From Chrysemys picta bellii (taxonomy: Eukaryota), in NCBI RefSeq assembly GCF_011386835.1, contig NC_088794.1, forward strand, positions 6,200,001 through 6,264,000: 64,000 nt of DNA, in the 5' to 3' direction. Of the stretch, positions 11,582-59,389 are shown piece by piece (within the stretch, counting starts at the first letter, position 1; every line of letters begins with the position of its first letter). The notes under the pieces are model-generated. The model was not told the DNA's origin. It saw only the letters and a program-made list of their open reading frames with translations, and did no database searches. Position numbers and translations under genes: made by a program.

Positions 11582-12520
11582 TCACTGAGAATCAATCATC
11601 CTGTCTAACATCCTCGTAAAGGCCTTTTTCACCTCCATGTTCCTCAGGCTGTAGATCAGGGGGTTCAACATGGGGATCACCAGGGTATAAAATAAAGAAA
11701 TGATTTTGTCCTGATCCATGAGGTACTTTGAACTGGGCCGTAAATACATGAAACATCCTGTTCCGTAGAAGATGGTGATGGCTGCCAGGTGGGAGGCGCA
11801 GGTGGAGAAGGCTTTGCATTGGCCCAGGGCAGAGTTGATCCTTAGGATAGCAACCAGAATGTATATGTAGGAGATGAGGATGATCAAGATAGTAGGTGTT
11901 ACCACCACAGCAGTACAGGTAAAATGAACAATGTCTGCAATGCGGGTGTCAGAACAGGACAACTTCAGGAGGGGGGGCACATCACAGAAGAAATGGTTGA
12001 TGATGTTTGATCCACAGAAGGACAAACGGAATATAAATAGAGTCTGAACTGTTGCATTTACCCAGCTGGCTAGGTACGACCCCAGCACCAGCAGCACGCA
12101 GAACCGCTTGGACATGATGACGGTGTACAGCAATGGGCTGCAGATGGCTGTGAAGCGATCATACGCCATCACCCCCAACAGGCAGCACTCACAGGACACA
12201 GCAATGCAGAAGAAGTAGAACTGCAGAGCGCACCCAGTGAATGTAATTGCTTTGCTCTCCACTGCAAAGGCCATCAGTGTCTGGGGAGCGATGACGGTGG
12301 AGTATCCCGCATCTAAGAGGGCCAGGTTACTGAGGAAAAAGTACATGGGGGTGTGAAGCCGGGACTCAATCCTGACTAAAGTGACCATCCCGAGATTCCC
12401 CACCAGGATGAGCAAGTAGATGAACAGAAACACCACAAAGAGCATGACTCTCAGGTGCTGGTTGTCCGTGAATCCCAACAAGATGAACTCCGTCACGGTG
12501 GTGTGATTCCCCTTCAACAT
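11582..12520 (-). CDS. Olfactory receptor, OR5-like (class II), 312 aa, intact single-exon CDS
   Basis: Motifs GN (TM1), [49 protein letters not shown]; N-glycosylation site NHT. Confidence 0.97.
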
Positions 12521-12917
12521 TTATCCCAGATGTGCTGTTCCCCACAAGGGAGAAAGCGAGCATTACATGGAAAGAAGAGACAAATAAAGGCTGAGTATCA
12601 ATTCCTTGGGGTCATTCTGATCATATACCATGTGGTTCTCTGGTGAGATCTAACAGAGGTTTAAGACTCCATTATGGGTTTTGAACTAACAGCCATGGGT
12701 CTCTTAGCTCAGGCGGTAGGAAAAAGAAAGAACTTTCTCCCAGCAGAGAGCTGGCCGGCCACGAAATGTCTGTACCTACTGTGGGCAGATTTGTGGTTCC
12801 AGGATCGGATTCCTGAGTCATCTCAGGGCCCATATGTAAATCCGTGGTAGAGATCAGCCTCGAATCGAGGGATCGCCAATGAATGATCGGGCGGTAGAGG
12901 CTTATATTCTACTAGAT

Positions 12918-13041
12918 AGCAAAAAGAACGAGGAGTACTTGTGGCACCTTAGAGACTAACACATTTATTTGAGCTAAGGTGCCACAAGTACTCCTTGTTC
13001 TTTTTGCTGATGCAGACTAACATGGCTACCCCTCTGAAACC
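12918..13041. mobile_element. Older Penelope-like hairpin insertion shared by both arms
   Basis: 12-bp TSD attctactagat (12906-12917 / 13042-13053); same family core ggagtacttgtggcaccttagagactaac. Confidence 0.8.
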
Positions 13042-13053
13042 ATTCTACTAGAT

Positions 13054-13364
13054 CGGGGTCGGCAACCTTTCAGAAGTGGTGTGCTGAGTCTTCATTTATT
13101 CACTCTAATTTAAGGGTCCGCGTGCCAGTAATACACGTTAACGTTTTTAGAAGGTCTCTTTCTATAAATCTATAATATATAACTAAACTATTGTTGTATG
13201 TAAAATAAATGTGGTTTTTAAAATGTTTAAGACGCTTCATTTAAAATTAAATTAAAATGCAGAGCCCCCCCGGACTGGTGGCCAGGACCTGGGCAGTGTG
13301 AGTGCCACTGAAAATCAGCTCGCGTGCCGCCTTCAGCACACGGGCCATAGGTTGCCTACCCCTG
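13054..13364. mobile_element. Non-autonomous hAT-type element (mirror 39361-39672)
   Basis: Termini c(a)ggggtcggcaac...gttgcctacccctg; approximate 8-bp TSD tactaga(t/g). Confidence 0.75.
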
Positions 13365-16300
13365 TACAAGAGAGAAGTCCCATATTCAGTGCTGACTGTC
13401 AAGAGCTCACCGAGTGCTGGTTCCTTACAATATAATGTATTATGACTAGATTCACATACAGTTACCCAGGTTGATTAATTCCACCCCTGGCCAGTGGTAC
13501 TCTGTGCACAGCAAGCTATTAAGGTGAGGATATAGGACATAGGTGCTCGTCCACTTTCTTTTATGGGGCCAGGCTAGTAGTTTCATACAATAAGGTACGT
13601 GGCAGGCAGGCAGAATTGTAGGAAAGGGATCCGTAGTCACCATACTGAGTTGCCAGAGTTACTCGATGAGCTTCTAGAGTATGTGTACCAGTAGCCTGGC
13701 CCCTTGTTTGTACTTCAGAGCGTCTGATGTCAAACACAATTAACTCCCTCCTAAAATTTTACCCTATTTCTCCTGTTCCACTCCTTATACCGGGGGCTGG
13801 ACCTATCAGGCTATAGAATCATTCTCGAACTCTTTTTGGCCAATTGTCCGTTTAAGTATTTGTATGCAGTGGAACAGCTTCATTTGGAGAAACTGGAGGA
13901 GCCCTGATCAGAATACCCCATAGCCCAGTGGTTGGGGCACTCTCTAAAGAGATGAGAGACCAACGTTTAAATGTTTTATCCCCACAAAACTGGTGGGGGG
14001 GGAGGGATTGAACTTGGGTCTCCCACACCCTGGATGACTGCTCTTACCACCAGAATAAAAGTTAGAAGGTTGGTGATGCCAGCATGAGCACCAACACTTC
14101 CTTCCCTTGCATTTCTCAAAAGAAGCAACTTAGGTGCCGTTCTACAGGACTGTCCTCCTGCCCATTGATCACAAGCAGTCGGGACTCAGGTGCTGAACTC
14201 CTGAGGGACAGCGCTTAGGGCATTCTCCCATTGGCGAGCTCCCCACTCAGCATGCTGGCTTTTATGGACCCCATTCCTAGTCAGCTTTCTCTCCTCCCCC
14301 TCCCCCCATGGCATAGGGAGCCCAGGGTCCTAACTCATGTTTTGTGAATCCTGGAAATTTTCTAGGGACCTAAAAGTTAGGCAGTATAACACTGAGCATT
14401 CCAATGCCTAAGTCCCTTGGTGAATCTGGCGTTACACATTTTCTTTATTGGTTTAAATTAGAGCTCATTAGAAAAGGAAATTTCCATTCCATGGTTAAAT
14501 CCAAATTCTGAAATTCCAAATACGAATGAAATGTTGACATTTCAAACTTTGCCCTGGAATGGAAATTCCGAACAAGAATTTCAGTTCAGAAACATTGAAA
14601 AGATATTTTTTCTGTAATTTTAAAACAATAATGTAAAGTAATGTATTTAATATAATATAGACGATTACATTAAAGTTTTAATATAATATAAAAGTAAATA
14701 TGAAATAAAACAATACGATAGACTCAAAATGAAACATTTTTACCTTATCAGAGCAAAACATTTGGACATTATCAAAACAAAATGAGAAAGTAAGACATAT
14801 TCTGGTTAGACATCTTCCCATCCAAAATGTAATCAAAATCAATGCATTCCTGCAAAATGTTATTTTTTTGTCAATTTTGCATTTTCTGACAGAATTGTTC
14901 CATCAAAATTGTTTTGACCATCGCTAGTTTTGGTGTTTCTAAAGATTGTTTTTCAGGATATATATCAATGGGGAAGGAGTTAGACTGATGGCTTTTGAAA
15001 GTGCATCTCCTACGCCATGCACCAGAACACGCACTGGCTGTGACAATGGGAGGTTTCCCTAAAACACTGCTCCCCTCTTTCAGCAGTCTGCGCGTGTGAC
15101 TAGTCCCACATCTAGAGGATATAAATCTAGGAACTAGATGGGGGGGAGTGGGAGTTGCTGATTCGGCTGTGGATAAAGAACGATGAGTCAGATGCTCAGG
15201 TAGCATGAATGGGAATCGACTTCCGTGGATCTACATTGACCGACACCAGCTGAGGATCCAGTGTTCTTAGAATATCTACCTCCAGAATAGTCCATCACCT
15301 GCACCGCATCACTGCACATAATTAATGAAACAATCCACATCCTTGATCTCCCCCAGACACACGTGGCAAATATACCGATTGGACACATTTCTTTACAATC
15401 AAAATACATTTTCAAAAAAATAGAAATAAAAGTTTTAATACTCTGAGACGCCCTCTATTTTGCAGTATGTTATTCTTACCTAAGTAATCGCTTCCCTTTC
15501 TCAGAATGCGAGCGACATGGGCATCATTTCCCTTGTCACTGCTTATTCTGCAACAGAAAAAAACAATATAAATGTGCTGTTCAGATAATCAGGACTCTGA
15601 TTTCAGTGAGTCTGATCTCCACGTGAATTAGCTCTAAATGACAATTGTATCCACATGTCGGAACCAAAGGAGAAAATTTATACCATCTCCTTTGGAGCTT
15701 AAACGACAAACCTACAAGAGGGAGATGTCTGATGTTCTTGATCCCAAAGGGGATTGTTTTTGGAGGTCGGAGGGGTTGTTTATATTTGTTTTGGTGGCAT
15801 ATTGGGACAGAATCCTTGGAGTACTGCCGAGTCTGAACATGAGGCCAGGCACAGGTGGGATTATTAGAACATCTTTCATGTCCCCTGGGAATAATTCCAC
15901 ATAATTGTGTTGCCTACAAAACCTGTGCAAACTCCCTGGGGATTCTTTTATCTCTTTTTTCAAAGTGAACCAGCTATTTTTCTCAGGCAGGAACCTGAAC
16001 AATCCCTCCAGTGGCTAGAACACTAGCCTGATACTCAGGAGACATGGTCATTTCCTTTCTCCATCACAGTCTTCCTGTGTGACGTAGGGCAAACCACTTA
16101 GTCTTTCTGTTCCTGCAAACTGGGGATATTAACGCTTCCCTACCTCACAAGGATGTTGTGAGGATAAATATATTAAAGCTTCTGAGATACTCTGGTGATG
16201 GGGCCATATAAATAGAGCTGAGCCAATAACTGATTTTTCACTCGTACACCTTGCAGGCTTCCAGTTCTCAGCTAGAGAGAGAGACAAGGTGGGTGAGGTA

Positions 16301-16519
16301 ATAGCTTTTATTGGACCAACTTCTGTTGGTGAGAGAGAGACCAGCTTTTGAGCATACACAGAGCTCTTCCTCAGGCCCTGGAAGGAACCAAACCCCTTTC
16401 CCACCACCGCCGGGAGGCAATGTAAATATTTATTAAAAAAAAAACACAACAGTACTACCTGGATCTTACCATTATTAGCCTCCAGTCCTTCCTGGGAACT
16501 GAAAATGTTGTCTGAGCTG

Positions 16520-16730
16520 GTCAGGTATCGCCAGCTTCCCCAGGGCAGTAACTATTTGCTTTGGCATTGGCCTGGCTTTCCTAAATCGAGGCTTGTGGCA
16601 CTCGAGGGTTGGGGTGATCTCATCACACATTCTGAAGTTCTGAAGCCATCGTTCGTCATCCCAGTTATCCAAAATCATGCAATCTCACGACACCATGCTG
16701 GTTCTCCTGGACCAGAAGTGGCAGTCCATC
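16520..16730 (-). mobile_element. PIF/Harbinger transposase remnant
   Basis: HFWSRRTS...WDDERWLQNFRM...IVTALGKLAIPD matches the N-terminal region of HARBI1-like transposases; agtgtagacgtagcc terminus at ~18021-18035. Confidence 0.75.
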
Positions 16731-17000
16731 CATGGGCATACCTTGGCAATACTGGCAGTCACCATATCTGTTCCATGGGGCCAGAGGAGTTTGTCAGTCA
16801 CCCATCATGGTCAGCCATCTTCGTCATGTCAGAAAGTTCTGTCCAGATTCCACCCAGCATCTTGCCAATTGCCCACCCCACCGCATGAACACTCGTCCCT
16901 CAAGAAGGAGTGTTAGGAGTGCGAGTGCCAATGTAGGATACTGGCTTGTATTTTCGCCTGAAATAGTATTTTAAGTTTTGTTTGCCTGTTTGATTTTTTG

Positions 17001-17019
17001 ATATATATATATATATATA

Positions 17020-17062
<43 letters not shown>
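17001..17062. repeat. Compound (TA)n(CA)n microsatellite (mirror 36446-36498)
   Basis: Direct reading. Confidence 0.97.
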
Positions 17063-17064
<2 letters not shown>

Positions 17065-17149
17065 TCTTACTAATATGTGTGAATAAAGGGACCCTTACTA
17101 AGGACAAAGACAGACACCATGTATGCTGCTTTTGCCTAAGTCAGATGGG

Positions 17150-17677
17150 TTTGTTAGTATAATGGGAACAGAGAAGAGCAGTAAAAGTGTTACTGGGCAT
17201 GGTGGGAGTGTAATATATGAGCACACCCTTGAAGACTGCCTCAAGTCCTATCTCAAGGCAAGGTCAAGCAACCAGTTGGGAAGGGCAAAGGGTGATTGGG
17301 GGGAATGTAAAACACTAAAAGGCCAGAGATATGCCTGCCCCTGACTGTAGCACAACCTCACTCCTTACCCCTCCCCTGGGGCACAAAAGGGGTGGGATGA
17401 AGACCCCCAGACACACGACCTTCCGAAACGGAGCGTGACCATAAGTTGTAAGGGGTGGGATGGTGGGCGTGCATTGCAGGTATCATTATACCTACCGAGA
17501 AGGTGGGGAACGGGACACTGGGAAACAAGGTTCTGTGATCTCAGAGTTATGGGACATGTTTGCTGGAAACTAAACCCAATAAACATTGCATTATCTGCAC
17601 TTCGGACTTCTGGTCAGCTTTCTGTCTGCATAACGAGAACCGGGGGAGTGAGAGGGTGAAGAGAAAACCTGATAACA
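17150..17677 (+). mobile_element. LTR-like element (mirror ~35833-36360)
   Basis: AATAAA at ~17578 and a 3' end ...gataaca; 5' boundary and TSD not resolved. Confidence 0.5.
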
Positions 17678-18314
17678 AGGAGCTGGAGCAGAACCACCAT
17701 CATTCCATGTCTTCCACCCAGTGTGGCCAGAGGGAGAGATGAGCGGGTACTGCCATGGGCAAATGCGTAAAAGGGATGGGCCGTGGCAACTGCACTCAGA
17801 TAGGTAGTTCCTAGAGTGTCTCCTGTGAGGCACAGAACCCTGGGATACTGCCTCTGAAGTGGTAGCGCTGCTCTGGCAGAACAAAAGTGGCAGTGTGGAT
17901 GCAGGTATGTGGTCTACACAGGGTTTTACCGCTCTCCAGCACAGTATATGTGGACACTACACGCAGGTCTGAGGAATATGCAGGAGCATGTACACAGTCA
18001 GCTATCCAAGTGTGCACGGAAGTGTAGACGTAGCCAAAGGAGGGGTATTCCCAAAGCACAAAGGTGAGTTAAGCACTCACCTCCCAATGAGCATCTGTGG
18101 GAACTAGGAATCTAACAGCCCTTTTGTGCCTTTGAGCCTCAGTAGCACCTAAATGTTGGACTTATACATCTCAAATGGCAAATAGTGACCTGACGGGCCT
18201 TTGTGGGTGTAGTTGAAACGTCTTAACGTTCTCTGACCCAAAATTCTGTGAACATCATCTTTGAACACATCTGGGGAGAGACTGTATGGCTGTCCATTGT
18301 ATCCAGCAATGACA

Positions 18315-18617
18315 TCATGGCATCTCGTATGCTCCCTTGTGGCTGTAAAGCCCGATCTGCGAGGAGCAAGATTCTAAATGGATGTCACTTAGAAATATGC
18401 AGGCTCCCGATGAAGACTTGGCATGATGCTTGACCATTTTTTCAATCAGTTTTTCTTGTGCGTCTTTCTCAAACTGTTTGATAGTTGTTGTCCTTTCAGG
18501 TCTCTCCTGGGCTGTGTCTTCAAACTTATCTATATTTATGTTACATGAGTTGAGATTCTGTTCTAGGTTGTCTTTGAAGCATTTGTGTTGACCACCTTGC
18601 TTGTGCTTTCCAAGTTC
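18315..18617 (-). mobile_element. RTE-clade LINE ORF2 C-terminal remnant
   Basis: Stop-free 100 codons ELGKHKQGGQHKCFKDNLEQNLNSCNINIDKFEDTA...SCSSQIGLYSH, resembling the RTE GKR..GGQ.KRFKD and SRIGLYSH motifs. Confidence 0.75.
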
Positions 18618-19834
18618 CCTAATCCTGCAAACACATGTGCATGTGCTTAATTTTACTCATACGAGTAGTCCAATTGACGTCAAAGGGATTACTCACATGC
18701 GTAAATTGAAGCACTCACATAAGAATGCCCAGGACTGGGATCTATGGTACTGAACTAATATGCCCTGGAGTCCATGGAAAGACTCCATTGAGTCAAATGG
18801 TCAATGCTCAGGCCCTTAATGAATGACAACGGGGCTGGTATAGTTTTTTCAGATTGATTTTAATGAGAAGGGGCAGCTATTTTTTTATACACAGCTGTTC
18901 TCCGGGAGGAGGTGCCCCCGTACAAACTATCTCGGCTAATTTCTTAACTCTAGTTAAACTACAAATATGTTTACTTATTCATTACCCTGGTAGAGCAAGT
19001 GTTAATACTGACATTATATCTGTGTAATGAGTCATATGTTGTTTTCCTAACTATTCCCAATACGTTTTCTTGCCTAATTAGATAATGACAGAATTGCTCA
19101 AAAAACAATGTTTTAATGAGGCCCACAGCAGTTTATTATAATCCATAATAATGGATGCTTTCTACAAAGTTCTCCTAACTTTGGGGAATTATGTCAACAT
19201 GAACATTACTGGCAAACCAGTGCTGGACAATAGCATTTACTCTTTTTCCCTTTTTTCCCCTTTCAATATCTTCACTTTCAGGCCAAATTCATCTCTGGCA
19301 TCATTCTTTTGTGCCAGAGCTACATTTGGCCCATTGTGTCCAAAGTCATGACAAATCAAACCAGGTCACTGCGGGCGTGAGTCTATGATCCTTGCTCACA
19401 TTGACTGGTACTTACTCATACCAGTAGCCTCAGTGAGATCAAGTACTACTCGGTGCAAGTAAAACAAGATAGACTTAGGTTCCAAATAAACTAAAAAAGA
19501 ATTTTAATACACACAAGACAGACAAGAAGGGGCTTTATCCGATACATAGCAATATGTTAGGGCATCTCGAAACTATAGGCTCAATTCTGATGTCCTTACA
19601 CTGACTAGCCTCTTACTCTGAGATTGGTCTCATTGACTTCCACAGGACTACCTGCTGAAAAAGTGTGGGTAAGGGTATCAAAATCTGCCATTAAAAAGGC
19701 AAAAAACGATGTTAGGGAAATACCCAGAATCTCCTATTTAATCTGGAAAAAACAGTGCAGTCCTCAGAGTGTTTTACGTCAATGCAACATTAATATAAAT
19801 CAGTGTCGAAACTGATGGTTACATGAAACACAAT

Positions 19835-20060
19835 TGGCCAGTGTGAATCAGCATCACTCCACTGATGTCAATGGGCCAGAAACCCCAGCTAACGTAACTC
19901 GATGGAGTGCCACGTCCATCCAGGTGGCTGTATCTCCCGCGGGTGTGAATCAGCATCACTCCACTGATGTCAATGGGCCAGAAACCCCAGCTAACGTAAC
20001 TCGATGGAGGGCCACGTCCATCCAGGTGGCTGTATCTCCCGCGGGTGTGAATCAGCTTTG
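19835..20060. repeat. 102-bp tandem repeat, 2 units plus partial (left arm)
   Basis: Unit repeats at 102-bp spacing; visible as a 34-aa repeat in the ORF track. Confidence 0.95.
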
Positions 20061-20432
20061 CTTCACTGAAATCAATGGCGCTCCCAGTGGTGTAAGCTAG
20101 CATCACTCTAGTGCGATCCACGGGGCCAGATCCCCTGCGGGTGAAAATCAGCATTAGCTCCATTGGCGCGTTTAACCCCCAGCTTTAGTAAATAGGTGGA
20201 GCTCTGCTGATGTCATTGGACCAGAACCATAACTGGTCAAAATTGGTGTCATTCCATTGAAGTCAATGTGGCTTCATACATTTATACAAGAAGAGGATCT
20301 GGCCCTTATGCTCACAGGATTTCCCAAAGCACATAAATGACTTAGGGGCACAAGCCTCTTATTGGGGCAGCCGTCTGGCTCGTTTTACCCAGTTGGCAGA
20401 TCATGTCCTTAACTTGTAACCTGGTATAGATA

Positions 20433-20629
20433 TGTAACCCACACACCTCCTGGGTGTGGTGCTCTGTCCCATCTGGTGGCCCTGAGACCACTTAGAGAGA
20501 GATTAATGAGTGTGCCCTACGGCCTTAGTTAAGAGCCATGTGGCTTTTAGCTCATGTGGTAGAGGCTCATGCACTAAGCTGCAAAGGTCCTAGGTTCGAT
20601 CCTGTCTACCAAGGTCTGTCAGTGTTACA
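20433..20629 (+). mobile_element. 197-bp solo LTR containing a tRNA-like Pol III cassette (TRIM-like)
   Basis: TGTAAC...GTTACA termini, 4-bp TSD gata, internal box A-like tagctcatgtgg and box B-like ggttcgatcct. Confidence 0.75.
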
Positions 20630-20799
20630 GATACACATCAAATTATGCATCCACAGGGGCAAGTGTGAATTGTCTTATGTTAACAGCTTCCCAACCTTAA
20701 CGCTAGCCATAACCCTGCAGAGTGTGGGGAAGCTCTGGGGCAGACTCTTGTTCCAAGACTGAACTAACCTGTAGAAGTTACCGGTTCCCCTCCGTCTCA

Positions 20800-21270
20800 G
20801 AAACATAGGGATTGCCAGACAGGATCAGACACAAGGTCTATCTAGTCTAATAGCCTGTCTATGACAGTGCCTTATACCAGATGCTTCTAAGGAAAGGTAA
20901 GAGCCTAACAGAAGGCAGATGTGGGAGAATCTGCCCCCAACATTAGGTCTCCTCCTAATCTCCAATAGTTAGAGATTAGTTTAAACCTTCAAGCATGAGA
21001 TTTAATCTCTCTCCCAAAAGTATTTTCTTTAATTATAACTCTTGATATTCTGCATGTGCATATCAATATCCTATCCCTTTTTGAACCTCACTAAATTCTT
21101 GATCACAATTACTTCTTGTGGCAATGAGTTCCCTAGAATAATCGTACATTTTGTGAAAATTGATTTCCTTGTCTTGATTTTGAATTTCCTAACTTTTAAT
21201 TTGATTGATTTTTCTCCTGTTCTTGTGTTATGAGACCGGAGAAGAGATGTTCTTGATCTACCTTCTATAG
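20800..21270 (-). mobile_element. Old CR1-type 3' fragment (mirror ~32145-32615; related piece ~23395-23600)
   Basis: Degenerate RTGEKSIKLK...RKSIFTKCTIILGNSLPQEV, resembling the CR1 C-terminus. Confidence 0.7.
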
Positions 21271-21640
21271 ACAATTCAGTCTCCACCAATTGGAGAATGA
21301 AAACAATGGTATATTAGGCAATGGTCTGTTTCCTTCTTGGCATGTTGTCAGCGGCCCATGCAGTGGTTATTCTGACGTTGTTTAATCAGTTCTCCCTAAG
21401 AATCATCTGCATTGTCAACTTTGTCCATTACCCTCCTTGACTTTTTATAGGTCCATATCTGAGTCTGCACTGGAATCAGAGTGAATTTCACATGATCTAC
21501 GAGTTTTATGGAAATATTTTCCACATACCAACCCCTGAGTTCTCTCTCTGATCCCACATGATTGAGATGTGCTGTTCTCTGCAGTCCTGGCCTCCTTAAA
21601 ATTCTGTAACGGTAGTGCTGGAATTGAGATTCTGTGATCT

Positions 21641-22140
21641 NNNNNNNNNNNNNNNNNNNNNNNNNNNNNNNNNNNNNNNNNNNNNNNNNNNNNNNNNNNN
21701 NNNNNNNNNNNNNNNNNNNNNNNNNNNNNNNNNNNNNNNNNNNNNNNNNNNNNNNNNNNNNNNNNNNNNNNNNNNNNNNNNNNNNNNNNNNNNNNNNNNN
21801 NNNNNNNNNNNNNNNNNNNNNNNNNNNNNNNNNNNNNNNNNNNNNNNNNNNNNNNNNNNNNNNNNNNNNNNNNNNNNNNNNNNNNNNNNNNNNNNNNNNN
21901 NNNNNNNNNNNNNNNNNNNNNNNNNNNNNNNNNNNNNNNNNNNNNNNNNNNNNNNNNNNNNNNNNNNNNNNNNNNNNNNNNNNNNNNNNNNNNNNNNNNN
22001 NNNNNNNNNNNNNNNNNNNNNNNNNNNNNNNNNNNNNNNNNNNNNNNNNNNNNNNNNNNNNNNNNNNNNNNNNNNNNNNNNNNNNNNNNNNNNNNNNNNN
22101 NNNNNNNNNNNNNNNNNNNNNNNNNNNNNNNNNNNNNNNN
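21641..22140. other. Assembly gap (500 N)
   Basis: Run of N. Confidence 1.
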
Positions 22141-31410: not shown

Positions 31411-32785
31411 AATAAGAAACAGGCCAGGGCTAGCTGACCCTGGTTTCAATCCACCGACCACTGGGTTATTATGGGAGTCGCACACTTCCAGCATTCTACT
31501 GAGAGGGTGTCTGCAGTTTGTTGTAATCAGTAAGGCCAGACCTCAAGAGATTCTGTTTGTCAATCACAGGCCTCTTCTACTTGATTTAAAGGTGAATTGC
31601 AGTTACCATTAATGCTTTGGGTTGGATGCCCTCTGTAGGTAAAAGGATGCTGAAATCATACAAATACCTGAGCTGTTCTGAAATTGCATCTCAATAGAGG
31701 ACGCAGTTAAATATACAGGCCCATACATTTTATATTCTCTCTCGTTAGACTGTGCTCAACTCCCAGTGTGCTAAGATCACAGAATCTCAATTCCAGCACT
31801 ACCGTTACAGAATTTTAAGGAGGCCAGGACTGCAGAGAACAGCACATCTCAATCATGTGGGATCAGAGAGAGAACTCAGGGGTTGGTATGTGGAAAATAT
31901 TTCCATAAAACTCATAGATCATGTGAAATTCACTCTGATTCCAGTGCAGACTCAGATATGGACCTATAAAAAGTCAGGGAGGGTAATGGACAAAGTTGAC
32001 AATGCAGATGATTCTTAGGGAGAACTGATTAAACAACGTCAGAATAACCACTGCATGGGCCGCTGACAAAATGCCAAGAAGGAAACAGACCATTGCCTAA
32101 TATACCATTGTTTTCATTCTCCAATTGGTGGAGACTGAATTGTCTATAGAAGGTAGATCAAGAACATCTCTTCTCCGGTCTCATAACACAAGAACAGGAG
32201 AAAAATCAATCAAATTAAAAGTTAGAAAATTCAAAATCAAGACAAGGAAGTCAATTTTCACAAAATGTACGATTATTCTAGGGAACTCATTGCCACAAGA
32301 AGTAATTGTGATCAAGAATTTAGTGAGGTTCAAAAAGGGATAGGGTATTGATATGCACATGCAGAATATCAAGAGTTATAATTAAAGAAATTACTTTTGG
32401 GAGAGAGATTAAATCTCATGCTTGAAGGTTTAAACTAATCTCTAACTATTGGAGATTAGGAGGAGACCTAATGTTGGGGGCAGATTCTCCCACATCTGCC
32501 TTCTGTGAGGCTCTAACACTTTCCTTAGAAGCATCTGGTATAAGGCACTGTCATAGACAGGCTATTAGACTAGATAGACCTTGTGTCTGATCCTGTCTGG
32601 CAATCCCTATGTTTCTGAGACGGAGGGGAACCGGTAACTTCTACAGGTTAGTTCAGTCTTGGAACAAGAGTCTGCCCCAGAGCTTCCCCACACTCTGCAG
32701 GGTTATGGCTAGCGTTAAGGTTGGGAAGCTGTTAACATAAGACAATTCACACTTGCCCCTGTGGATGCATAATTTGATGTGTATC

Positions 32786-32982
32786 TGTAACACTGACAGA
32801 CCTCGGTAGACAGGATCGAACCTAGGACCTTTGCAGCTTAGTGCATGAGCCTCTACCACATGAGCTAAAAGCCACATGGCTCTTAACTAAGGCCGTAGGG
32901 CACATTCATTAATCTCTCTCTAAGTGGTCTCAGTACCACCAGATGGGACAGAGCGCCACACCCAGGAGGTGTGTGGGTTACA
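32786..32982 (-). mobile_element. Right-arm copy of tRNA-containing solo LTR
   Basis: TGTAAC...GTTACA termini, TSD tatc on both sides. Confidence 0.75.
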
Positions 32983-33344
32983 TATCTACACCAGGTTACA
33001 AGTTAAGGACATGATCTGCCAACTGGTAAAACGAGCCAGACGGCTGCCCCAATAAGTGGCTTGTGCCCCTAAGTCATTTATGTGCTTTGGGAAATCCTGT
33101 GAGCGTAAGGGCCGGATCCTCTTCTTGTATAAATGTATGAAGCCACATTGACTTCAATGGAATGACACCAATTTTGACCAGTTATGGTTCTGGTCCAATG
33201 ACATCAGCAGAGCTCCACCTAGTTACTAAAGCTGGGGGTTAAACGCGCCAATGGAGCTAATGCTGATTTTCACCCGCTGGGGATCTGGCCCCGTGGATCG
33301 CACTAGAGTGATGCTAGCTTACACCACTGGGAGCGCCATTGATT

Positions 33345-33680
33345 TCAGTGAAGTGATGCTGATTTACACCCGCTGGAGATACAGCCACCTGGATGGACGT
33401 GGCACTCCATCGAGTTACGTTAGCTGGGGTTTCTGGCCCATTGACATCAGTGGAGTGATGCTGATTCACACCCGCTGGAGATACAGCCACATCGATGGAC
33501 GTGGCACTCCATCGAGTTACGTTAGCTGGGGTTTCTGGCCCATTGACATCAGTGAAGTGATGCTGATTCACACCCGCTGGAGATACAGCCACATCGATGG
33601 ACGTGGCACTCCATCGAGTTACGTTAGCTGGGGTTTCTGGCCCATTGACATCAGTGGAGTGATGCTGATTCACACTGGCC
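33345..33680. repeat. 102-bp tandem repeat, 3 units plus partial (right arm)
   Basis: agtgatgctgatt recurs at 33352, 33454, 33556 and 33658. Confidence 0.95.
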
Positions 33681-34891
33681 AATTGTGTTTCATGTAACCA
33701 TCAGTTTCGACACTGATTTATCTTAATGTTGCATAGACGTAAAACACTCTGAGGACTGCACTGTTTTTTCCAGATTAAATAGGGGATTCTGGTTATTTCC
33801 CTAACATCGTTTTTTGCCTTTTTAATGGCAGATTTTGATACCCTTACCCACACTTTTTCAGCAGGTAGCCCTGTGGAAGTCAATGAGACCAATCTCAGAG
33901 TAAGAGGCTAGTCAGTGTAAGGACATCAGAATCGAGCCTATCGTTTCGAGATGCCCTAACATATTGCTATGTATCGGATAAAGCCCCTTCTTGTCTGTCT
34001 TGTGTGCATTAAAATTCTTTTTTAGTTTATTTGGAACCTAAGTCTATCTTGCACTGAGTAGTACTTGATCTCACTGAGGCTACTGGTATGAGTAAGTACC
34101 AGTCAATGTGAGCAAGGATCATAGACTCACGCCCGCAGTGACCTGGTTTGATTTGTCATGACTTTGGACACAATGGGCCAAACGTAGCCCTGGCAGAAAA
34201 GAATGATGCCAGGGATGAATTTGGCCTGAAAGTGAAGATATTGAAAGGGGAAAAAAACGGAAAGAGAGTAAATGCTATTGTCCAGCACTGGTTATGCCGC
34301 TAATGTTCATGTTGACATAATTCCCCAAAGTTAGGAGAACTTTGTAGAAAGCATCCATTATTATGGATTATAATAAACTGCTGTGGGCCTCACTAAAACA
34401 TTGTTTTTTGAGCAATTCTGTCATTATCTAATTAGGCAAGAAAACGTATTGGGAATAGTTAGGAAAACAACATATGACTCATTACACAGATATAATGTCA
34501 ATATTAACACTTGCTCTACCAGAGTAATGAATAAGTAAACATATTTGTAGTTTAACTAGAGTTAAGAAATTAGCCGAGATAGTTTGTACGGGGGCACCTG
34601 CTCCCGGAGAACAGCTGTGTATAAAAAAATATCTGCCCCTTCTCATTAAAATCAATCTGAAAAAACGATACCAGCCCCCTTGTCATTCATTAAGGGCCTG
34701 AGCATTGACCATTGGACTGAATGGAGTCTTTCCATAGACTCCAGGGCATATTAGTTCAGTACCATAGATCCCAGTCCTGGGCATTCTTATGTGAGTGCTT
34801 CAATTTACGCATGTGAGTAATCCCTTTGACGTCAATTGGACTACTCGCATGAGTAAAATTAAGCACATGCACATGTGTTTGCAGGATTAGG

Positions 34892-35194
34892 GAACTTGAA
34901 AAGCACAAGCAAGGTTGTCAACACAAATGCTTCAAAGACAACCTAGAACAGAATCTCAACTCATGTAACATAAATATAGACAAGTTTGAAGACACAGCCA
35001 AGGAGAGACCTGAAAGGACAACAACTATCAAACAGTTTGAGAAAGACGCACAAGAAAAACTGATTGAAAAAATGGTCAAGCATCATGCCAAGTCTTCATC
35101 GGGAGCCTGCATATTTCTAAGTGACATCCATTTAGAATCTTGCTCCTCACAGATCGGGCTTTACAGCCACAAGGGAGCATACGAGATGCCATGA
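34892..35194 (+). mobile_element. RTE-clade LINE ORF2 C-terminal remnant (mirror copy)
   Basis: Same 100-codon open frame ending SQIGLYSHKGAYEMP*. Confidence 0.75.
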
Positions 35195-36444
35195 TGGCAT
35201 TGCTGGATACAATGGACGGCCATACAGTCTCTCCCCAGATGTGTTCAAAGATGATGTTCACAGAATTTTGGGTCAGAGAACGTTAAGACGTTTCAGCTAC
35301 ACCCACAAAGGCCCGTCAGGTCACTAATTGCCATTTGAGATGTATAAGTCCAACATTTAGGTGCTACTGAGGCTCAAAGGCACAAAAGGGCTGTTAGATT
35401 CCTAGTTCCCACAGATGCTCATTGGGAGCTGAGTGCTTAACTCACCTTTGTGCTTTGGGAATATCCCTCCTTTGGCTACGTCTACACTTCCGTGCACACC
35501 TGGATAGCTGACTGTGTACATGCTCCTGCATATTCCTCAGACCTGCGTGTAGTGTCCACATATACTGTGCTGGAGAGCGGTAAAACCCTGTGTAGACCAC
35601 ATACCTGCATCCACACTGCCACTTTTGTTCTGCCAGAGCAGCGCTACCACTTCAGAGGCAGTATCCCAGGGCTCTGTGCCTCACAGGAGACACTCTAGGA
35701 ACTGCCTTTCTGAGTGCAGTTGCCACGGCCCATCCCTTTTACGCATTTGCCCATGGCAGTAGCCACTCATCTCTCCCTCTGGCCACACTGGATAGAAGAC
35801 ATGGAAGGATGGTGGTTCTGCTCCAGCTCCTTGTTAGCAGGTTTTCTCTTCACCCTCTCACTCCCCCAGTTCTCGTTATGCAGACAGAAAGCTGACCAGA
35901 AGTCCAAAGTGCAGATAATGCAATGTTTATTGGGTTTAGTTTCCAGCAAACATGTCCCATAACTCTGAGGTCACAGAACCTTGTTTCCCAGTGTCCTGTT
36001 CCCCACCTCCTCCGTAGGTATAATGATACCTGCAATGCACGCCCACCATCCCACCCCTTACAACTTATGGTCACGCTCCGTTTCAGAGGGTCATGGGTCT
36101 GGGGGTCTTCATCCCACCCCTTTTGTGCCCCAGGGGAGGGGTAAGGAGTGAGGTTGTGCTACAGTCAGGGGCAGGCATTTCTCTGGCCTTTTAGTGTTTT
36201 ACATTCCCCCCAATCACCCTTTGCCCCTCCTGACTGGCTGTTTGACCTTGCCTTGAGATAGGACTTGAGGCAGTCTTCAAGGGTGTGCTCATATATTACA
36301 CTCCCACCATGCCCAGTAACACTTTTACTGCTCTTATCTGTTCCCATTATACTAACAAACCCATCTGGCTTAGGCAAAAGCAGCATACATGGTGTCTGTC
36401 TTTGTCCTTAGTAAGGGTCCCTTTATTCACACATATTAGTAAGA

Positions 36445-36498
<54 letters not shown>

Positions 36499-36769
36499 CA
36501 AAAAATCAAACAGGCAAACAAAACTTAAAATACTATCTCAGGCGAAATTACAAGCCAGTATCCTACATTGGCACTCGCACTCCTAACACTCCTTCTTGAG
36601 GGACGAGTGTTCATGAGGTGGGCAGGGCAATTGGCAAGATGCTGGGTGGAATCTGGACAGAACTTTCTGACATGACGAAGATGGCTGACCATGATGGGTG
36701 ACTGACAAGCTCCTCTGGCCCCATGGAACAGATATGGTGACTGCCAGTATTGCCCAGGTATGCCCATGG

Positions 36770-36977
36770 ATGGACTGCCACTTCTGGTCCAGGAGAACCA
36801 GCATGGTGTCGTGAGATTGCATGATTTTGGATAACTGGGATGACGAACGGTGGCTTCAGAACTTCAGAATGTGTGATGAGATCACCCCAACCCTCGAGTG
36901 CCACAAGCCTCGATTGAGGAAAGCCAGGCCAGTGCCAAAGCGAATGGTTACTGCCCTGGGGAAGCTGGCGATACCTG
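36770..36977 (+). mobile_element. PIF/Harbinger transposase remnant (mirror copy)
   Basis: WDDERWLQNFRM...VTALGKLAIPD. Confidence 0.75.
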
Positions 36978-50046: not shown

Positions 50047-51003
50047 ATGCTTTTGATGATGCCCAGAGGAAATGAGAGCACCGTGTCTCTATTTCTGCTG
50101 CTGGGATTCTCCAGTCTAGAAGAGCGGCAGGTTCTGCTTTTCCTGGTGTTCTCCCCGGTGTACGTGATAATCCTGACCTCCAACATCACCATCATGGCAG
50201 CCATCAGTGTTGATCGGAGCCTCCATACCCCCATGTACTTCTTACTCTTCGCTTTGTCCTTCTCGGAAACCTGCACCACTATGGCTGTCGTCCCCAAGCT
50301 GCTGGTGAGTTTGCTGTCAGGAAACCAAACAATTTCTTTCCTGGGATGCGCTGCTCAAATGTTCTGCTTCTTTGGCTTCGGGGGCACAAATTGTTTCCTG
50401 CTGTCAGCCATGGCTTACGATCGCTATGTGGCCATATGTAAGCCGCTGCAATACCCAGTTGTGATAAACAGGAGGGTTTGCGTTGAGCTGGTCGCCGTTT
50501 CATGTGCAACTGGCTTTCTTATAGCACTAGGCATCAGTTCCCTTACATTCAGTTTGCCCTTCTGTGGGCCCAATGCCATCAGACATTTCTTCTGTGACAT
50601 CTCGCCCGTTCTGAGGCCGGCGTGCAGTGACCATCATATCATTGGGATTGCCATTGTTTTTCTGTGTGCCTTTGTTTTGCTAGGCACCTTCACAGGAATC
50701 ATCCTCTCTTACATCTATATCCTCGCCGCCATCCTGAAGATCCGCTCTGCCACAGGCAGGCGCAAGACCTTCTCCACCTGCGCCTCCCACCTCATCGTTG
50801 TGATCACACACTTCAGCTGTGCTTTTTTTGTGTATTTAATACCCAAATCAACCGCTTCCCTAGATGAGGACACTTTGATTGCCTTGTCTTATACCTTGTT
50901 TAGTCCTATGTTGAACCCTGTGGTTTATAGTCTGAGAAACAGGGAAGTTAAATCAGCCCTAAGGAAATTAACTGCCCACACATTTCTTTCTCCAAAAATG
51001 TGA
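50047..51003 (+). CDS. Olfactory receptor, OR10-like, 318 aa, intact
   Basis: [71 protein letters not shown]. Subfamily assignment is from motif resemblance only. Confidence 0.95.
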   Translation: MLLMMPRGNESTVSLFLLLGFSSLEERQVLLFLVFSPVYVIILTSNITIMAAISVDRSLHTPMYFLLFALSFSETCTTMAVVPKLLVSLLSGNQTISFLGCAAQMFCFFGFGGTNCFLLSAMAYDRYVAICKPLQYPVVINRRVCVELVAVSCATGFLIALGISSLTFSLPFCGPNAIRHFFCDISPVLRPACSDHHIIGIAIVFLCAFVLLGTFTGIILSYIYILAAILKIRSATGRRKTFSTCASHLIVVITHFSCAFFVYLIPKSTASLDEDTLIALSYTLFSPMLNPVVYSLRNREVKSALRKLTAHTFLSPKM

Positions 51004-51566
51004 AAAGTTGCAAATTTCGGCACTTCTAATATATCAATGACTTCTGCATGATGTCACTGTTGCCCATGGTATGGTCTTCAAGGCACCAACCTCGTCTTTC
51101 TCTTTGTCGGGGCATAAAGAGCACCTGTGGGTCAGTATAAATAATGGACAGTAAAAGAATATTGTTGCTTCTTATTCTGAAAGCAGCATTGCCCCTCTGC
51201 CAATGTCTGGGGCCTTGCAAGTCAGCTTCCCGGCAGCAGTTAAATCTATGATGCAGAGTCTGGCTGTATTCTGAGTGTAACTTGCTTTATTCACACATCT
51301 CTACCAGTCCTGAAATGAGATGGTCAAACAACATGCAGGGCCATCTCTTATTCCAGGAATCTCATCCCAACACTGATACCCAGGGAGCAACTCTGCCTCA
51401 AAAATTGACTTTAATCAGAGACCAAGACGGACAGCAAACTCTCCTGCCACTCACACAACTCCCATTCCCCCCGAAGCTGCCTCTACAACCAAAGCCTTAC
51501 TTTACCCAAAGATGATAACAACACCGCATGTTCCCCTCAAGAGTCAAAACTTGCTTGCACACTAAG

Positions 51567-51836
51567 AGGATGTTTACACTGGCACTGAAGGTGTAATTTT
51601 CAGCTAGGGTAGACCTACCCCTTCTAGCTCTGATCAAGTTAGCATGCTAAAAACAGAAGCGTAGCCATGGTGGTGCGAACGGCAGGATGGGTTAGCCACC
51701 CCGAGAATGATCTCATTTGAAACCTTTGGCATGTAATCGGGCATAAGCTCTCATGCTGTCAGGGCTACACTTCTATTTTTAGCATGCTCGTTCGATCAGA
51801 GCTAGAAGGGGTATGTCTACCTGAGATGGATGTTAC
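51567..51836. mobile_element. Palindromic MITE-like element
   Basis: ~60-bp imperfect inverted repeat: agggtagacctaccccttctagctctgatc... versus ...gatcagagctagaaggggtatgtctacct. Confidence 0.65.
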
Positions 51837-52867
51837 AAAAAGAACGGAGACCATGTACAACAGCACCACCTGATGATGCCCGCATAACAATACTTTTTCT
51901 CTCCTATTTTTTATCATCTCTGTATATGTATAAGTGCAAAGTGTTATTACGGCCAGTTAGTGGCAATGAAGGAGTTCCTGACTTCTAGCCTTTTAATCAA
52001 CATGACACACAGACAGCTCAGTACCTTTCCCCCACAAATACACAGATCTTTGCTGGAATGGAGGTATCAGTATTTGGAATATCAGGGAAGGTGGCTGAAC
52101 GACTGCCACAGTTTGAGGTTTAAATATAGCTGGTGGGTTTTTTCCCACAGGAAAAAAGGGATAAACTTTTTTTGTGAAAAATTTTCCCCGTTTTTTGACC
52201 AGCTCCAGTTTTTGTCAATAGACAGCCCCACCCGCCCTTCTCCCATCTCCCTGAGATAACTGCCGATATCCCAGCACAACCATTTCTTCCCATGTAAATA
52301 TTATAAAGGAAAATAACCTCTTAAAGCTCCCTGCTTCCAATTCTTGCCCCCAGTGCATCACTTTGCTTGTGTGAGTTGAGGACCAGGGGGTATTTGCTTA
52401 TGCCACTAAACTTGTTAAACTGAAAAATAACTTCAAATTATTATTTTTTTTCCCCAAAAGATCAGGGTGAAATTAAAGGCAATTTATGGTCCTAGGTAGA
52501 TCATGACATGTTCCTTCCCCCTTCCCCGTAAACTCACCCTCCACTTGGAATGGTGATGACGAAAGTGCCATCCCCTTCCAGAGAGGCAAGGCTAATGCAT
52601 TTTCTCACCCAGGAATAGTATTGTGTTCATTCGTCCCTCTCTAGGGGAGCATCAGGAGTTTCCTCTGCCCCTAGAGATGAAGGGGTGGTGGCAGGACACC
52701 CCCCCACCAGTACATACCCCAGCAGCTAGGGTGTATCTGTTTTTGAAGAGAGCAAGCCAACTGAATTCCTCCATTCTTGCCACACACAGCTCTCTGCTGG
52801 GATGGGTTGGCATGGCTCCCAAAGCAGTGTGTCCTGCCGTTAACATCCCATTCAGATGCATGGGGCA

Positions 52868-53680
52868 GGTAACGGAATAGACCCATGTTCACACACTACA
52901 CGGTATTGTTATAATGCTTGTACAAGGTTTGCCTTGTGAGGTATTAGTTAAAACTCATAACTTGCTGATGAATATCATGGCAAAATGCACATGGCATCAT
53001 TACATGTAAAGTTAGGAACATAAGATGAAATCATGACTCAAGCATGTTTCCCAGATAAGTCCAGGGAGTAGCTAAACCACTTCCTCAGAGACAAAGGGCA
53101 AGCTGATACTTCAGGTGTCAAGTCTGACTCAACAAGGCTGATAGACCATTACCTGCCAAGTGGCCATTCTTTGACAAGGAAAGGGGCAGGGATAGAAATC
53201 TACATTTTAGCAAAGAAACTGCATGGAGTTTCCTTTCTTCACCAGACTGCCTGTCACCTTTCTCCTAGCTGGAAATGCTTCTCAATGGGGGGCAGGACTA
53301 TAAAAAGAAGGGACAGACACCCCAAGACTCCCATCATCTCTCTCCCTGTCTATCTCTGGCATCACACCTAAGAAGATAAAAGAAAATAGTCACTGGACTA
53401 ACGGGGAGGGATCCAGACCTAAGAGTTTGGTCAGTAATAGGCTGGAGTCTGTAGTGAGAAACTTTGTTTGAATCTAACCTAGTTTATTAAATTAGGCACT
53501 AGTAACTATTTTATCTTTATTTTTCTTATAACAGTTTGTGACTTTTCAGCCTCATTACTTGTACTCACTTAACATCTATCTCTTTGTAATTAATAAACTT
53601 GTTTTACTGTTTTACCTAGTCCAGTGTGTTTAAATTGGAGTGTCTGTCTATTCTATTTAAAATAATAAGATGGCATGTAC
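52868..53680 (+). mobile_element. LTR-like element (solo or truncated)
   Basis: TATAAAAAG at ~53298, downstream AATAAA at ~53591, composition resembling turtle LTR families; ends not resolved. Confidence 0.6.
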
Positions 53681-54179
53681 TTGGTGGATCAGACAGATGC
53701 TCATGAGAAAGAGGATAAATAAGGTGGGGAAGGAAAACGTCACATGAGGGAGGGTGTGACAGCAGGAATACAAGTCTCCTATCCCAAATATTCAGGATTT
53801 AGATGAAGCAGGGCCAGGTGGTGATATCATCTGGTTCCTTCTCTCTGGCTTGGTCTGGTCAGGACGTCTTTCAGGATCAGGACGATGAAGGCCCAATTGT
53901 GTCATGGTGGATGCCAGAGGATGATGGAGGTGGCAGCCATACTGGTAAAGCTCAGGCCTTCCAACCCACTTGTCCCCATGCTATGATGTAGTGACCCCAC
54001 CCCCAGATAAACAGCATCCATTGAGGGATGGATACTACATCCCTGGATCATTAACCTATCCAAGCACGTTTGGGTGGATTCAACTATAAACATTTCCTCC
54101 CATTTGTAGAATCTTTCAGCTCATTGCCGTGCCAACCCATGACTTTACCAGGTGCCTTGCAGACCCCTTAGTGCTGCTC

Positions 54180-59381: not shown

Positions 59382-59389
59382 GACGTACT

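What the first reader, a model, noticed from the sequence alone, without database searches (positions are those of the whole stretch)
11681..12889. 1209-bp perfectly identical tract over the OR5-like gene: probable arm-to-arm gene conversion
Seen: base-by-base comparison of 11681-12889 with its mirror (~39836-41044) shows zero differences, including all synonymous sites and ~370 bp of 5' non-coding DNA, versus 11 of 300 in a block 2 kb away. Purifying selection alone would not remove synonymous and non-coding differences. Inference: recent ectopic conversion centred on the gene.
Basis: partly seen in the sequence, partly recalled or inferred. Interest (0 to 1): 0.7.

Follow-up and report, generated by a model that had tools for sequence, protein, structure and literature searches.

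The report
Gene conversion between duplicated turtle smell-receptor genes
Two roughly 2%-diverged copies of a painted-turtle olfactory-receptor gene block are letter-for-letter identical over 1,209 bases, most likely because one copy was recently overwritten from the other by gene conversion, which is a clean but ordinary example of how duplicated genes exchange sequence.

Summary
Window 11681-12889 equals the reverse complement of 39836-41044 with 0 differences. This is the maximal run. The next longest in the window is 285 bp and the median is 23 bp, against about 2.4 difference events per 100 bp between the copies.

Chance is excluded (P about 7e-11), and so is selection. With every nonsynonymous site frozen and the lowest local rate, P is still about 6e-4. 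The two other OR gene pairs in the same duplicate carry 10 and 7 coding differences, 9 of them synonymous.

Recent non-allelic gene conversion between the two copies is the best explanation (about 0.85).

New context:
- Each copy is a bounded 32-35 kb block carrying three OR genes.
- At least four such blocks exist and show other significant exchange tracts of 630-870 bp.
- The converted gene is itself a chimera of two OR lineages, with its junction inside the tract, so only these two copies can be the partners.
- The "palindrome" orientation rests on a scaffold join.

The scan has logged similar conversion and unequal-crossover cases elsewhere in this genome. This is a known kind of event and of low interest.

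The parts
11681..12889 (.). Identical tract, left copy (1209 bp)
   Evidence: 0 mismatches to the reverse complement of 39836-41044. It is the maximal run in the alignment.
39836..41044 (.). Identical tract, right copy (1209 bp)
11582..12520 (-). OR-A, left copy: intact 312-aa olfactory receptor ('OR5AR1-like'). Codons 1-280 lie inside the tract.
   Evidence: ORF; Pfam 7tm_4 E 3.7e-51; names given by sources.
40205..41149 (+). OR-A, right copy: intact 314 aa. It differs from the left copy only at V281M, M308K, D310Y and a stop-to-Trp change that adds 2 codons.
11582..11680 (-). The 3' 99 bp of the OR-A coding sequence, outside the tract: 4 substitutions (3 nonsynonymous and a stop loss, 0 synonymous)
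12521..12889 (-). 369 bp upstream of the ATG inside the tract. A polypyrimidine run ends in AG at 12536-12535, 14 nt before the ATG, which is a probable splice acceptor (inferred), so most of this stretch is probably intron.
   Evidence: Sequence read. Homology to the paralogs D, A' and OR-C ends about 75-100 bp upstream of the ATG.
11970..12001 (-). Chimera junction of OR-A (residues 174-183; mirror at 40724-40755). The N-terminal part is P0004-type and the C-terminal part is D-type.
   Evidence: Against P0004 there are 2 mismatches in residues 1-183 and 41 in 184-312. Against D's OR-A there are 53 in 1-173 and 11 in 174-312. DNA identity to D decays at about 12000.
1..21640 (-). Left copy of the duplicated block. 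It continues to window coordinate -12936, about 34.6 kb in all, and carries OR-C, OR-B and OR-A.
31774..63976 (+). Right copy of the duplicated block (about 32.2 kb), carrying OR-A, OR-B (50047-51003) and OR-C (59879-60814)
21641..22140 (.). 500-N scaffold gap lying exactly at the inner end of left-copy homology. This is a contig end, so the true inner boundary is unknown.
   Evidence: assembly methods in PMC13077969.
22141..31773 (.). Apparent spacer, containing a frameshifted OR pseudogene at 29361-30998. It may be right-copy sequence whose left counterpart is missing in the gap.
12918..13008 (.). Hairpin-forming palindromic repeat (stem of about 34 bp) 28 bp outside the tract's upstream edge, with a mirror at 39717-39807
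   Evidence: DNA fold -36.1 and -34.2 kcal/mol, z about -10. Sub-threshold miRNA-hairpin matches on both strands. The 29-mer occurs 8 times in the window.
1..736 (-). OR-B left copy (cut by the window start), used as an internal control. The OR-B pair has 10 differences in 948 bp (5 synonymous).

Best explanation
Two paralogous blocks of 32-35 kb lie in a painted-turtle olfactory-receptor cluster (chromosome CM062321.1, about 6.19-6.26 Mb). Each carries three OR genes, and the blocks have diverged by about 2%. A recent non-allelic (interlocus) gene conversion copied at most 1,209 bp from one block into the other. In this process a break or gap in one copy is repaired by homologous recombination with the other copy as template, without reciprocal exchange. 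The event erased the roughly 24-29 differences expected there. The converted stretch runs from inside the probable 5' intron through codon 280 of OR-A, so both genes now encode the same first 280 residues and differ only in the C-terminal tail. Shown here: the identity and its exact limits, that it is an outlier, that constraint cannot explain it, that the two blocks are real paralogs with different outer flanks, and that only these two copies share the chimeric junction the tract spans. Inferred: the repair mechanism, the age and the single-event reading. The 95% upper bound on tract divergence is 0.25%, against 1.98% substitutions between the copies, so the event falls within the last eighth or so of their history. 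The tract is also more alike than two average alleles of this animal (0.48%). The direction (donor and acceptor) is unknown.
For: The 1209-bp identity is exact and maximal. The uniform null gives P about 7e-11, and flank-based local rates give P 1.4e-7 to 4e-16. With omega = 0.35 (estimated against OR-C) about 10-19 differences are expected. Even with omega = 0 and the lowest local rate, 7.5 are expected and P = 5.8e-4. As internal controls in the same blocks, the OR-B pair has 10 differences in 948 bp (5 synonymous) and the OR-C pair has 7 in 936 bp (4 synonymous). OR-A codons 1-280 (0/840) against the 736 bp of OR-B coding sequence visible in the window (7/736) gives Fisher P = 0.005. The last 33 codons of OR-A, just outside the tract, have 3 nonsynonymous changes and a stop loss, so the gene is not unusually constrained. 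About 270 bp of the upstream part has no homology to paralogs. The blocks are bounded, and their outer flanks continue ungapped into unrelated sequence. L-R distance (1.91%) equals L-D (1.92%) and R-D (1.76%), where D lies 1.07 Mb away, so L and R are paralogs and not alleles. Other significant identity tracts exist between copies: L-R 687, L-D 764, L-U 811, D-U 869 and R-D 629 bp, with permutation P <= 0.0012. Site patterns cluster into a mosaic, which shows recurrent exchange in this family. The tract spans the OR-A chimera junction, and no other protein in the collection is at least 90% identical, so L and R are the only possible partners for the whole tract. The assembly is hifiasm on about 14-kb Q34 HiFi reads with no polishing step described. 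Such reads span the tract plus several kb of diverged flank on both sides.
Against: The right copy lies on a small 47-kb contig between two scaffold gaps, in a region where the assembly is visibly fragmented. HiFi coverage was only about 20x. No outgroup shows the pre-conversion state, so non-reciprocity and direction are inferred and not observed.
Confidence: 0.85

Rival explanations
1. Assembly artefact. In a family of four or more copies at 98% identity and only about 20x HiFi coverage, read over-correction or consensus mixing in hifiasm made the two contigs identical over 1.2 kb although the real copies differ.
For: The region is fragmented. One 500-N gap lies exactly at the end of left-copy homology and a second at window-equivalent 69141-69640. 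The right copy is on a 47-kb contig, and related unplaced scaffolds exist. No read check was possible, and neither protein is found in any other assembly.
Against: The reads were about 14 kb at Q34-35 and no polishing step is described. The tract is 8.7 kb or more from any contig end and has sharply diverged flanks on both sides. About 25 consecutive paralog-specific variants would have to be erased while neighbours 1 bp outside were kept. The mosaic patterns are typical of real interlocus conversion (PMC10172114).
Confidence: 0.07
2. Both copies were independently overwritten in their 5' part by a third, P0004-type OR locus, and the remaining roughly 300 bp of the tract is identical by chance and constraint.
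For: OR-A residues 1-183 are about 99% identical to P0004, P0141 and P0130 elsewhere in the genome, so close potential donors exist. Exchange among dispersed copies does occur.
Against: It needs two events with matching ends plus a chance-identical 290-320 bp (11681 to about 12000), which at 1.3-2% divergence has P of roughly 0.002-0.02. The inner 9 kb of both copies (12890-21640) is homologous at about 97%, so the chimera predates the L-R duplication. The P0004 locus could not be fetched.
Confidence: 0.03
3. False duplication. The two 'copies' are divergent haplotypes of one locus that the primary assembly kept and scaffolded side by side, so the tract is just a stretch of allelic identity.
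For: The left copy ends at a contig end. The right copy is a small contig placed by scaffolding.
Against: The outer boundaries lie inside ungapped sequence and are followed by unrelated DNA on each side. L-R divergence of 1.9% is four times the 0.48% heterozygosity and equals the distance to copy D, 1.07 Mb away. There are copy-specific insertions of 1.9 kb and 0.77 kb.
Confidence: 0.02
4. No exchange occurred. Purifying selection on the receptor, a locally low mutation rate and chance left the stretch free of differences.
For: 70% of the tract is coding. Divergence in 10.0-11.7 kb is somewhat low, at 1.3 events per 100 bp.
Against: P is 5.8e-4 or less even with all nonsynonymous sites frozen and the lowest local rate. 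The OR-B and OR-C pairs in the same blocks carry 9 synonymous and 8 nonsynonymous differences. The OR-A tail just outside the tract has 3 nonsynonymous changes in 32 codons. The 369 bp of non-coding DNA is also identical, and most of it is not conserved in paralogs.
Confidence: 0.01

Closest known systems
Interlocus (non-allelic) gene conversion between segmental duplications (Harpak et al. 2017, bioRxiv 10.1101/135152; Vollger et al. 2023, PMC10172114)
   Same: High-identity paralogous blocks carry a local tract of identity embedded in diverged flanks. Several tracts occur in a multi-copy family, and a coding exon is affected. The tract size is within the reported range: detected tracts average about 880 bp and the mean is estimated at 250 bp, CI 63-1000.
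   Different: This is a turtle and not a human. It is a single-genome inference without population or outgroup data. At 1.2 kb it lies at the long end for a single event.
Arm-to-arm gene conversion in sex-chromosome palindromes (Rozen et al. 2003, Nature; recalled from memory, not read here)
   Same: Inverted paralogous arms with a spacer exchange sequence non-reciprocally.
   Different: Those arms are kept above 99.9% identical along their whole length. Here the copies are about 98% identical with one local 1.2-kb tract. The inverted orientation rests on a scaffold join, and the same family also exchanges with copies 1 Mb away, so nothing palindrome-specific is needed.
Gene conversion and concerted evolution among clustered olfactory-receptor genes (Sharon et al. 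1999 and Nagawa et al. 2002, recalled from memory; Steiger et al. 2009, PMC2758906, for birds)
   Same: Neighbouring OR paralogs are homogenised over the coding region and adjacent upstream DNA.
   Different: Here the evidence is a base-pair-resolved tract with silent and intronic sites, not phylogenetic clustering. The gene involved is itself a two-lineage chimera.
Chimeric OR genes made by unequal crossing-over in this same genome (earlier scan findings s1-328312 and s1-335719)
   Same: OR-A is a fusion of a P0004-type front and a D-type back, with a junction inside the coding sequence.
   Different: That is the older event that built the gene. The finding itself is a later homogenisation of two copies of the finished chimera.

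Membership tests
Interlocus gene conversion tract | Two paralogous (non-allelic) copies with diverged homologous sequence on both sides of the tract | tested here: met
   Flanks run at 1.3-2.9 events per 100 bp on both sides. The copies are bounded with unrelated outer flanks. L-R distance equals L-D distance.
Interlocus gene conversion tract | Identity run significantly longer than expected from the distribution of differences (GENECONV-type test) | tested here: met
   The run is 1209 bp, against a simulated maximum of 609 in 20,000 permutations; analytic P 7e-11.
Interlocus gene conversion tract | Not explained by selective constraint (silent and non-coding sites also homogenised) | tested here: met
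   P <= 5.8e-4 with omega = 0. The control OR pairs carry 9 synonymous differences. The 369 bp of non-coding DNA is identical.
Interlocus gene conversion tract | Non-reciprocal transfer and its direction shown by an outgroup or by phylogenetic incongruence | tested here: inconclusive
   Copy D is alignable only up to about 12000 and P0004 is available only as protein. No sequence carries the pre-conversion state. The P0004 locus could not be fetched.
Interlocus gene conversion tract | Both copies and their identity confirmed in raw reads | not testable with these tools
Palindrome with arm-to-arm conversion (sex-chromosome type) | Inverted arms established in contiguous sequence | tested here: inconclusive
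   The left copy ends at a 500-N gap. The right copy is on a 47-kb contig between two gaps, oriented by Hi-C and Bionano scaffolding only.
Palindrome with arm-to-arm conversion (sex-chromosome type) | Arms kept near-identical (>99.9%) along their whole length by ongoing conversion | tested here: not met
   Arms are 95-98% identical by alignment block, with 1.98% substitutions and 72 indel events.
Vertebrate olfactory receptor (Pfam 7tm_4) | Full-length match to the OR profile with an intact single-exon ORF of about 310 aa | tested here: met
   7tm_4 E 3.7e-51 and 1.8e-51 over profile positions 1-277 and 1-279 of 280. ORFs of 312 and 314 aa. Closest named relatives are 'olfactory receptor 5AR1-like'.

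The most novel reading that the evidence does not exclude
The conversion may not have been a random event. It may have been started by a break at the hairpin-forming palindromic repeat that sits 28 bp outside the tract's upstream edge in both copies (12918-13008 / 39717-39807). If so, cruciform-prone mobile-element relics would act as local initiators of ectopic conversion that homogenise the intron-proximal region and ligand-binding part of a newly made chimeric receptor. The event may also be young enough to be still polymorphic in painted turtles.
Probability: 0.1. Interest if true: 0.45.

Novelty: new member of a known kind. Interest (0 to 1): 0.2.

Why it matters
It gives a base-pair-resolved, statistically clean example of interlocus gene conversion in a reptile olfactory-receptor cluster. 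It also shows three layers of history at one gene: a fusion of two OR lineages, a block duplication of about 34 kb, and then local homogenisation. For users of the SLU_Cpb5.0 assembly there are three practical points. First, the 'palindrome' orientation is unverified. Second, OR-A's two copies encode identical first 280 residues, so short reads and expression data cannot tell them apart there. Third, phylogenies or dN/dS tests on this OR family will be misled by mosaicism. It does not reveal a new mechanism.

Tried and rejected
(1) Read-level check. The look-up of sequencing runs listed 18 runs holding the stretch, from 9 studies.
(2) Independent assemblies. Exact look-ups of both OR-A proteins found only GCA_011386835.2.
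(3) Outgroup for the 5' part.
(4) Copy D as an outgroup across the tract. Rejected, because D has no homology upstream of about 12594 and only 68-87% identity over 12000-12594.
(5) An older, wider L-R conversion as the cause of the low-divergence shoulder at 10.0-11.7 kb. Not supported, because four-way site patterns there show no excess of L=R sites (first bin).
(6) Hairpin repeat as a general tract-end feature. No other long tract end lies near a copy of the element.
(7) My first OR-B codon comparison was out of register because the two copies have different annotated starts. Its long codon list and its '689 differences' are void and were redone. The Fisher test is not affected, because its 7/736 count came from the copy-to-copy alignment.

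Full report
OBSERVATION. The window holds two long inverted matches, left 1-21640 and right 31774-50782 and beyond. A direct comparison gives 0 mismatches between 11681-12889 and the reverse complement of 39836-41044. In the full copy-to-copy alignment this is exactly the maximal identical run. It is bounded by substitutions at 11680/41045 and 12890/39835. The next longest runs in the window are 285, 285 and 251 bp, and the median is 23 bp. Over 18,869 aligned columns there are 373 substitutions (1.98%) and 72 indel events.

IS IT MORE THAN CHANCE OR CONSTRAINT? With events placed uniformly, the largest run in 20,000 simulations was 609 bp, and the analytic P for a run of 1209 or more is 7e-11. 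Local flank rates give P between 1.4e-7 and 4e-16. The gene is an intact olfactory receptor: left copy 11582-12520 (-), 312 aa; right copy 40205-41149 (+), 314 aa; Pfam 7tm_4 E about 1e-51. With omega = 0.35 (estimated against the OR-C paralog in the window), 10-19 differences are expected in the tract. Even with every nonsynonymous site frozen and the lowest local rate, 7.5 are expected (P = 5.8e-4).

Three internal controls agree with this.
- The 33 codons of OR-A just outside the tract carry V281M, M308K, D310Y and a stop-to-Trp change, with no synonymous change.
- The two other OR gene pairs in the same duplicated blocks are not homogenised. OR-B has 10 differences in 948 bp (5 synonymous) and OR-C has 7 in 936 bp (4 synonymous).
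- About 270 bp of the upstream part is not conserved in any paralog examined.

Selection plus chance is therefore excluded.

WHAT GENOME AND HOW WAS IT ASSEMBLED? The proteins match Chrysemys picta bellii 'olfactory receptor 5AR1-like' entries. Both copies lie on CM062321.1 of GCA_011386835.2, where window position = record position - 6,200,000. The assembly paper (PMC13077969) describes hifiasm 0.16.1 on about 20x HiFi reads (mean about 14 kb, Q34-35) with Hi-C, followed by tigmint/ARCS, 3D-DNA and Bionano curation. No polishing step is mentioned. [quoted passage not shown] Reads of 14 kb span the 1.2-kb tract plus several kb of 2%-diverged flank on each side, and the tract is 8.7 kb or more from any contig end.

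THE READ TEST COULD NOT BE RUN. The look-up of sequencing runs listed 18 holders from 9 studies, all kept as Logan contigs. I worked beside those places from then on. Both OR-A proteins occur in no other public assembly.

WHAT THE STRUCTURE REALLY IS. Fetching neighbouring loci showed that the duplication extends beyond the window. The left copy runs from window coordinate -12936 to 21640 (34.6 kb) and the right copy from 31774 to 63976 (32.2 kb). Each carries OR-A, OR-B and OR-C at a spacing of about 10 kb. Beyond the outer ends, both sides continue ungapped for 5-7 kb into unrelated sequence. These are therefore bounded paralogous blocks and not allelic haplotigs.

The inner end of the left copy coincides exactly with the 500-N gap (21641-22140). 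The right copy sits on a 47-kb contig between that gap and a second one at window-equivalent 69141-69640. The inverted ('palindrome') orientation and the 9.6-kb 'spacer' therefore rest on scaffolding. The true duplicated block may also be longer on the inner side.

At least two more copies of the outer part exist. Copy D lies at 5.11-5.14 Mb on the same chromosome. Copy U is the unplaced scaffold JAAOEE020001078.1.

Over 21.5 kb the four copies are about equidistant: L-R 1.91%, L-D 1.92%, R-D 1.76% and pairs with U 2.05-2.43%. Their site patterns, however, cluster strongly.
- L and U share 38 sites over window 6788-2813, and they also share the 1.9-kb insertion at 4223-6159.
- R has 53 private differences over 79 to -1905, where L, D and U are nearly identical.
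- L and R share 23 sites over -1906 to -3904.

Long identical runs occur in other pairs: L-R 687, L-D 764, L-U 811, D-U 869 and 672, and R-D 629 bp. Each pair's longest run is significant by permutation (P <= 0.0012), except R-U, which is marginal at 0.036. Exchange among these blocks is thus recurrent and not confined to the two neighbouring copies. The OR-A tract is the longest and apparently the youngest example.

THE GENE IS A CHIMERA. Against P0004, a different painted-turtle OR lineage on the same chromosome, OR-A has 2 mismatches in residues 1-183 and 41 in 184-312. Against copy D's OR-A it has 53 mismatches in residues 1-173 and 11 in 174-312. DNA identity to D is about 96% in the 3' flank and the 3' third of the coding sequence. 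It falls to 68-87% over 12000-12594 and vanishes further upstream. D has no counterpart of the inner 9 kb of the blocks.

OR-A is therefore a fusion of a P0004-type front and a D-type back, with its junction at window 11970-12001. This is the expected product of unequal recombination between two OR paralogs, as the scan has logged elsewhere in this genome. Both L and R carry the same junction and homologous inner DNA at about 97%, so the fusion predates the L-R duplication. The identical tract spans the junction, and no other protein in the collection is at least 90% identical to OR-A. Only L and R can therefore have exchanged the whole tract.

MECHANISM. The best reading is a single recent non-allelic gene conversion. 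A lesion in one copy was repaired from the other by homologous recombination without crossover. The converted stretch is at most 1,209 bp, because the true ends lie between the outermost erased differences and the first retained ones.

On age, 0 differences in 1209 bp gives a 95% upper bound of 0.25% divergence, against 1.98% between the copies. The event thus falls in the last eighth or so of their history. The tract is also more alike than two average alleles of this animal (0.48%, about 5.8 differences expected per 1209 bp). From this I infer that the event may still be polymorphic. The copies' divergence of about 2% is of the same order as the 1.8% Chrysemys-Trachemys difference quoted in PMC13077969. 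This places the block duplications very roughly near that split, if conversion is ignored.

The tract length fits published values: detected non-allelic tracts average about 880 bp, and the mean is estimated at 250 bp, CI 63-1000. Interlocus conversion is pervasive in high-identity human duplications. The direction of transfer cannot be determined.

A POSSIBLE INITIATOR, UNPROVEN. A strong hairpin-forming palindromic repeat lies 28 bp outside the upstream edge of the tract in both copies (12918-13008; stem of about 34 bp; -36 kcal/mol; z about -10). Its 29-mer arm occurs 8 times in the window, including in the Penelope-like element at 6587-6809. It gives only sub-threshold miRNA-hairpin matches in Rfam. 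No other long tract end lies near such an element, so this is one post-hoc coincidence.

RIVALS. Assembly artefact is about 0.07 and was not directly testable here. Independent overwriting of both copies by a P0004-type donor is about 0.03; it needs two matching events plus a chance-identical 300 bp. False duplication of alleles is about 0.02, contradicted by the different outer flanks and by L-R being as distant as L-D. Constraint plus chance is about 0.01.

VERDICT.

Noticed in passing
window 11970-12001 (mirror 40724-40755): OR-A is a two-lineage chimera. Residues 1-183 are about 99% identical to P0004-type painted-turtle ORs. Residues 184-312 are of the D/A' type (92-94%). The junction is shared by both copies and lies inside the identical tract.
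   Followed up: partly
window 12918-13008 and 39717-39807: A strong hairpin-forming palindromic repeat (stem of about 34 bp, -36 kcal/mol) lies 28 bp beyond the tract's upstream edge. Its 29-mer arm occurs 8 times in the window, including in the Penelope-like element at 6587-6809. Rfam gives only sub-threshold miRNA-hairpin matches.
   Followed up: partly
window 21641-22140; L008:19263-19762 (window-equivalent 69141-69640): The right copy lies on a 47-kb contig between two 500-N scaffold gaps, and the first gap sits exactly where left-copy homology ends. The inverted orientation, the 'spacer' and the inner boundary of the duplication are therefore unverified.
   Followed up: partly
L008:19763-20892 (window-equivalent 69641-70770) and L004:16629-17802: The sequence right after the second gap is 99.9% identical to the unplaced scaffold JAAOEE020001078.1, which probably belongs there or is its haplotig. 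This is another copy of the same OR block.
   Followed up: no
window 79 down to window-equivalent -1905 (L003), and right copy about 50700-52700: Over about 2 kb at the 3' end of OR-B and downstream of it, the right copy has 53 private differences while copies L, D and U are nearly identical to each other. Either three copies were homogenised or the right copy was overwritten from an unseen donor.
   Followed up: partly
window 4223-6159 and 15753-16520: These are left-copy-specific insertions of 1.9 kb and 0.77 kb relative to the right copy. The 1.9-kb one is shared with scaffold U but is absent from R and D.
   Followed up: partly
window 29361-30998 (+): A frameshifted olfactory-receptor pseudogene (53-59% identical to OR-A, in pieces) lies in the apparent spacer. 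A short OR fragment also lies at 62673-62747.
   Followed up: no
window 41143-41149: The right copy of OR-A has lost the ancestral stop codon (TGA to TGG) and ends two codons later, giving 314 aa against 312.
   Followed up: yes
window 50047-50058 and L003:9989-10003: The two OR-B copies are annotated with different starts (318 vs 315 aa), although the upstream ATG and the bases around it are identical in both. This is an annotation inconsistency and not a sequence difference.
   Followed up: yes
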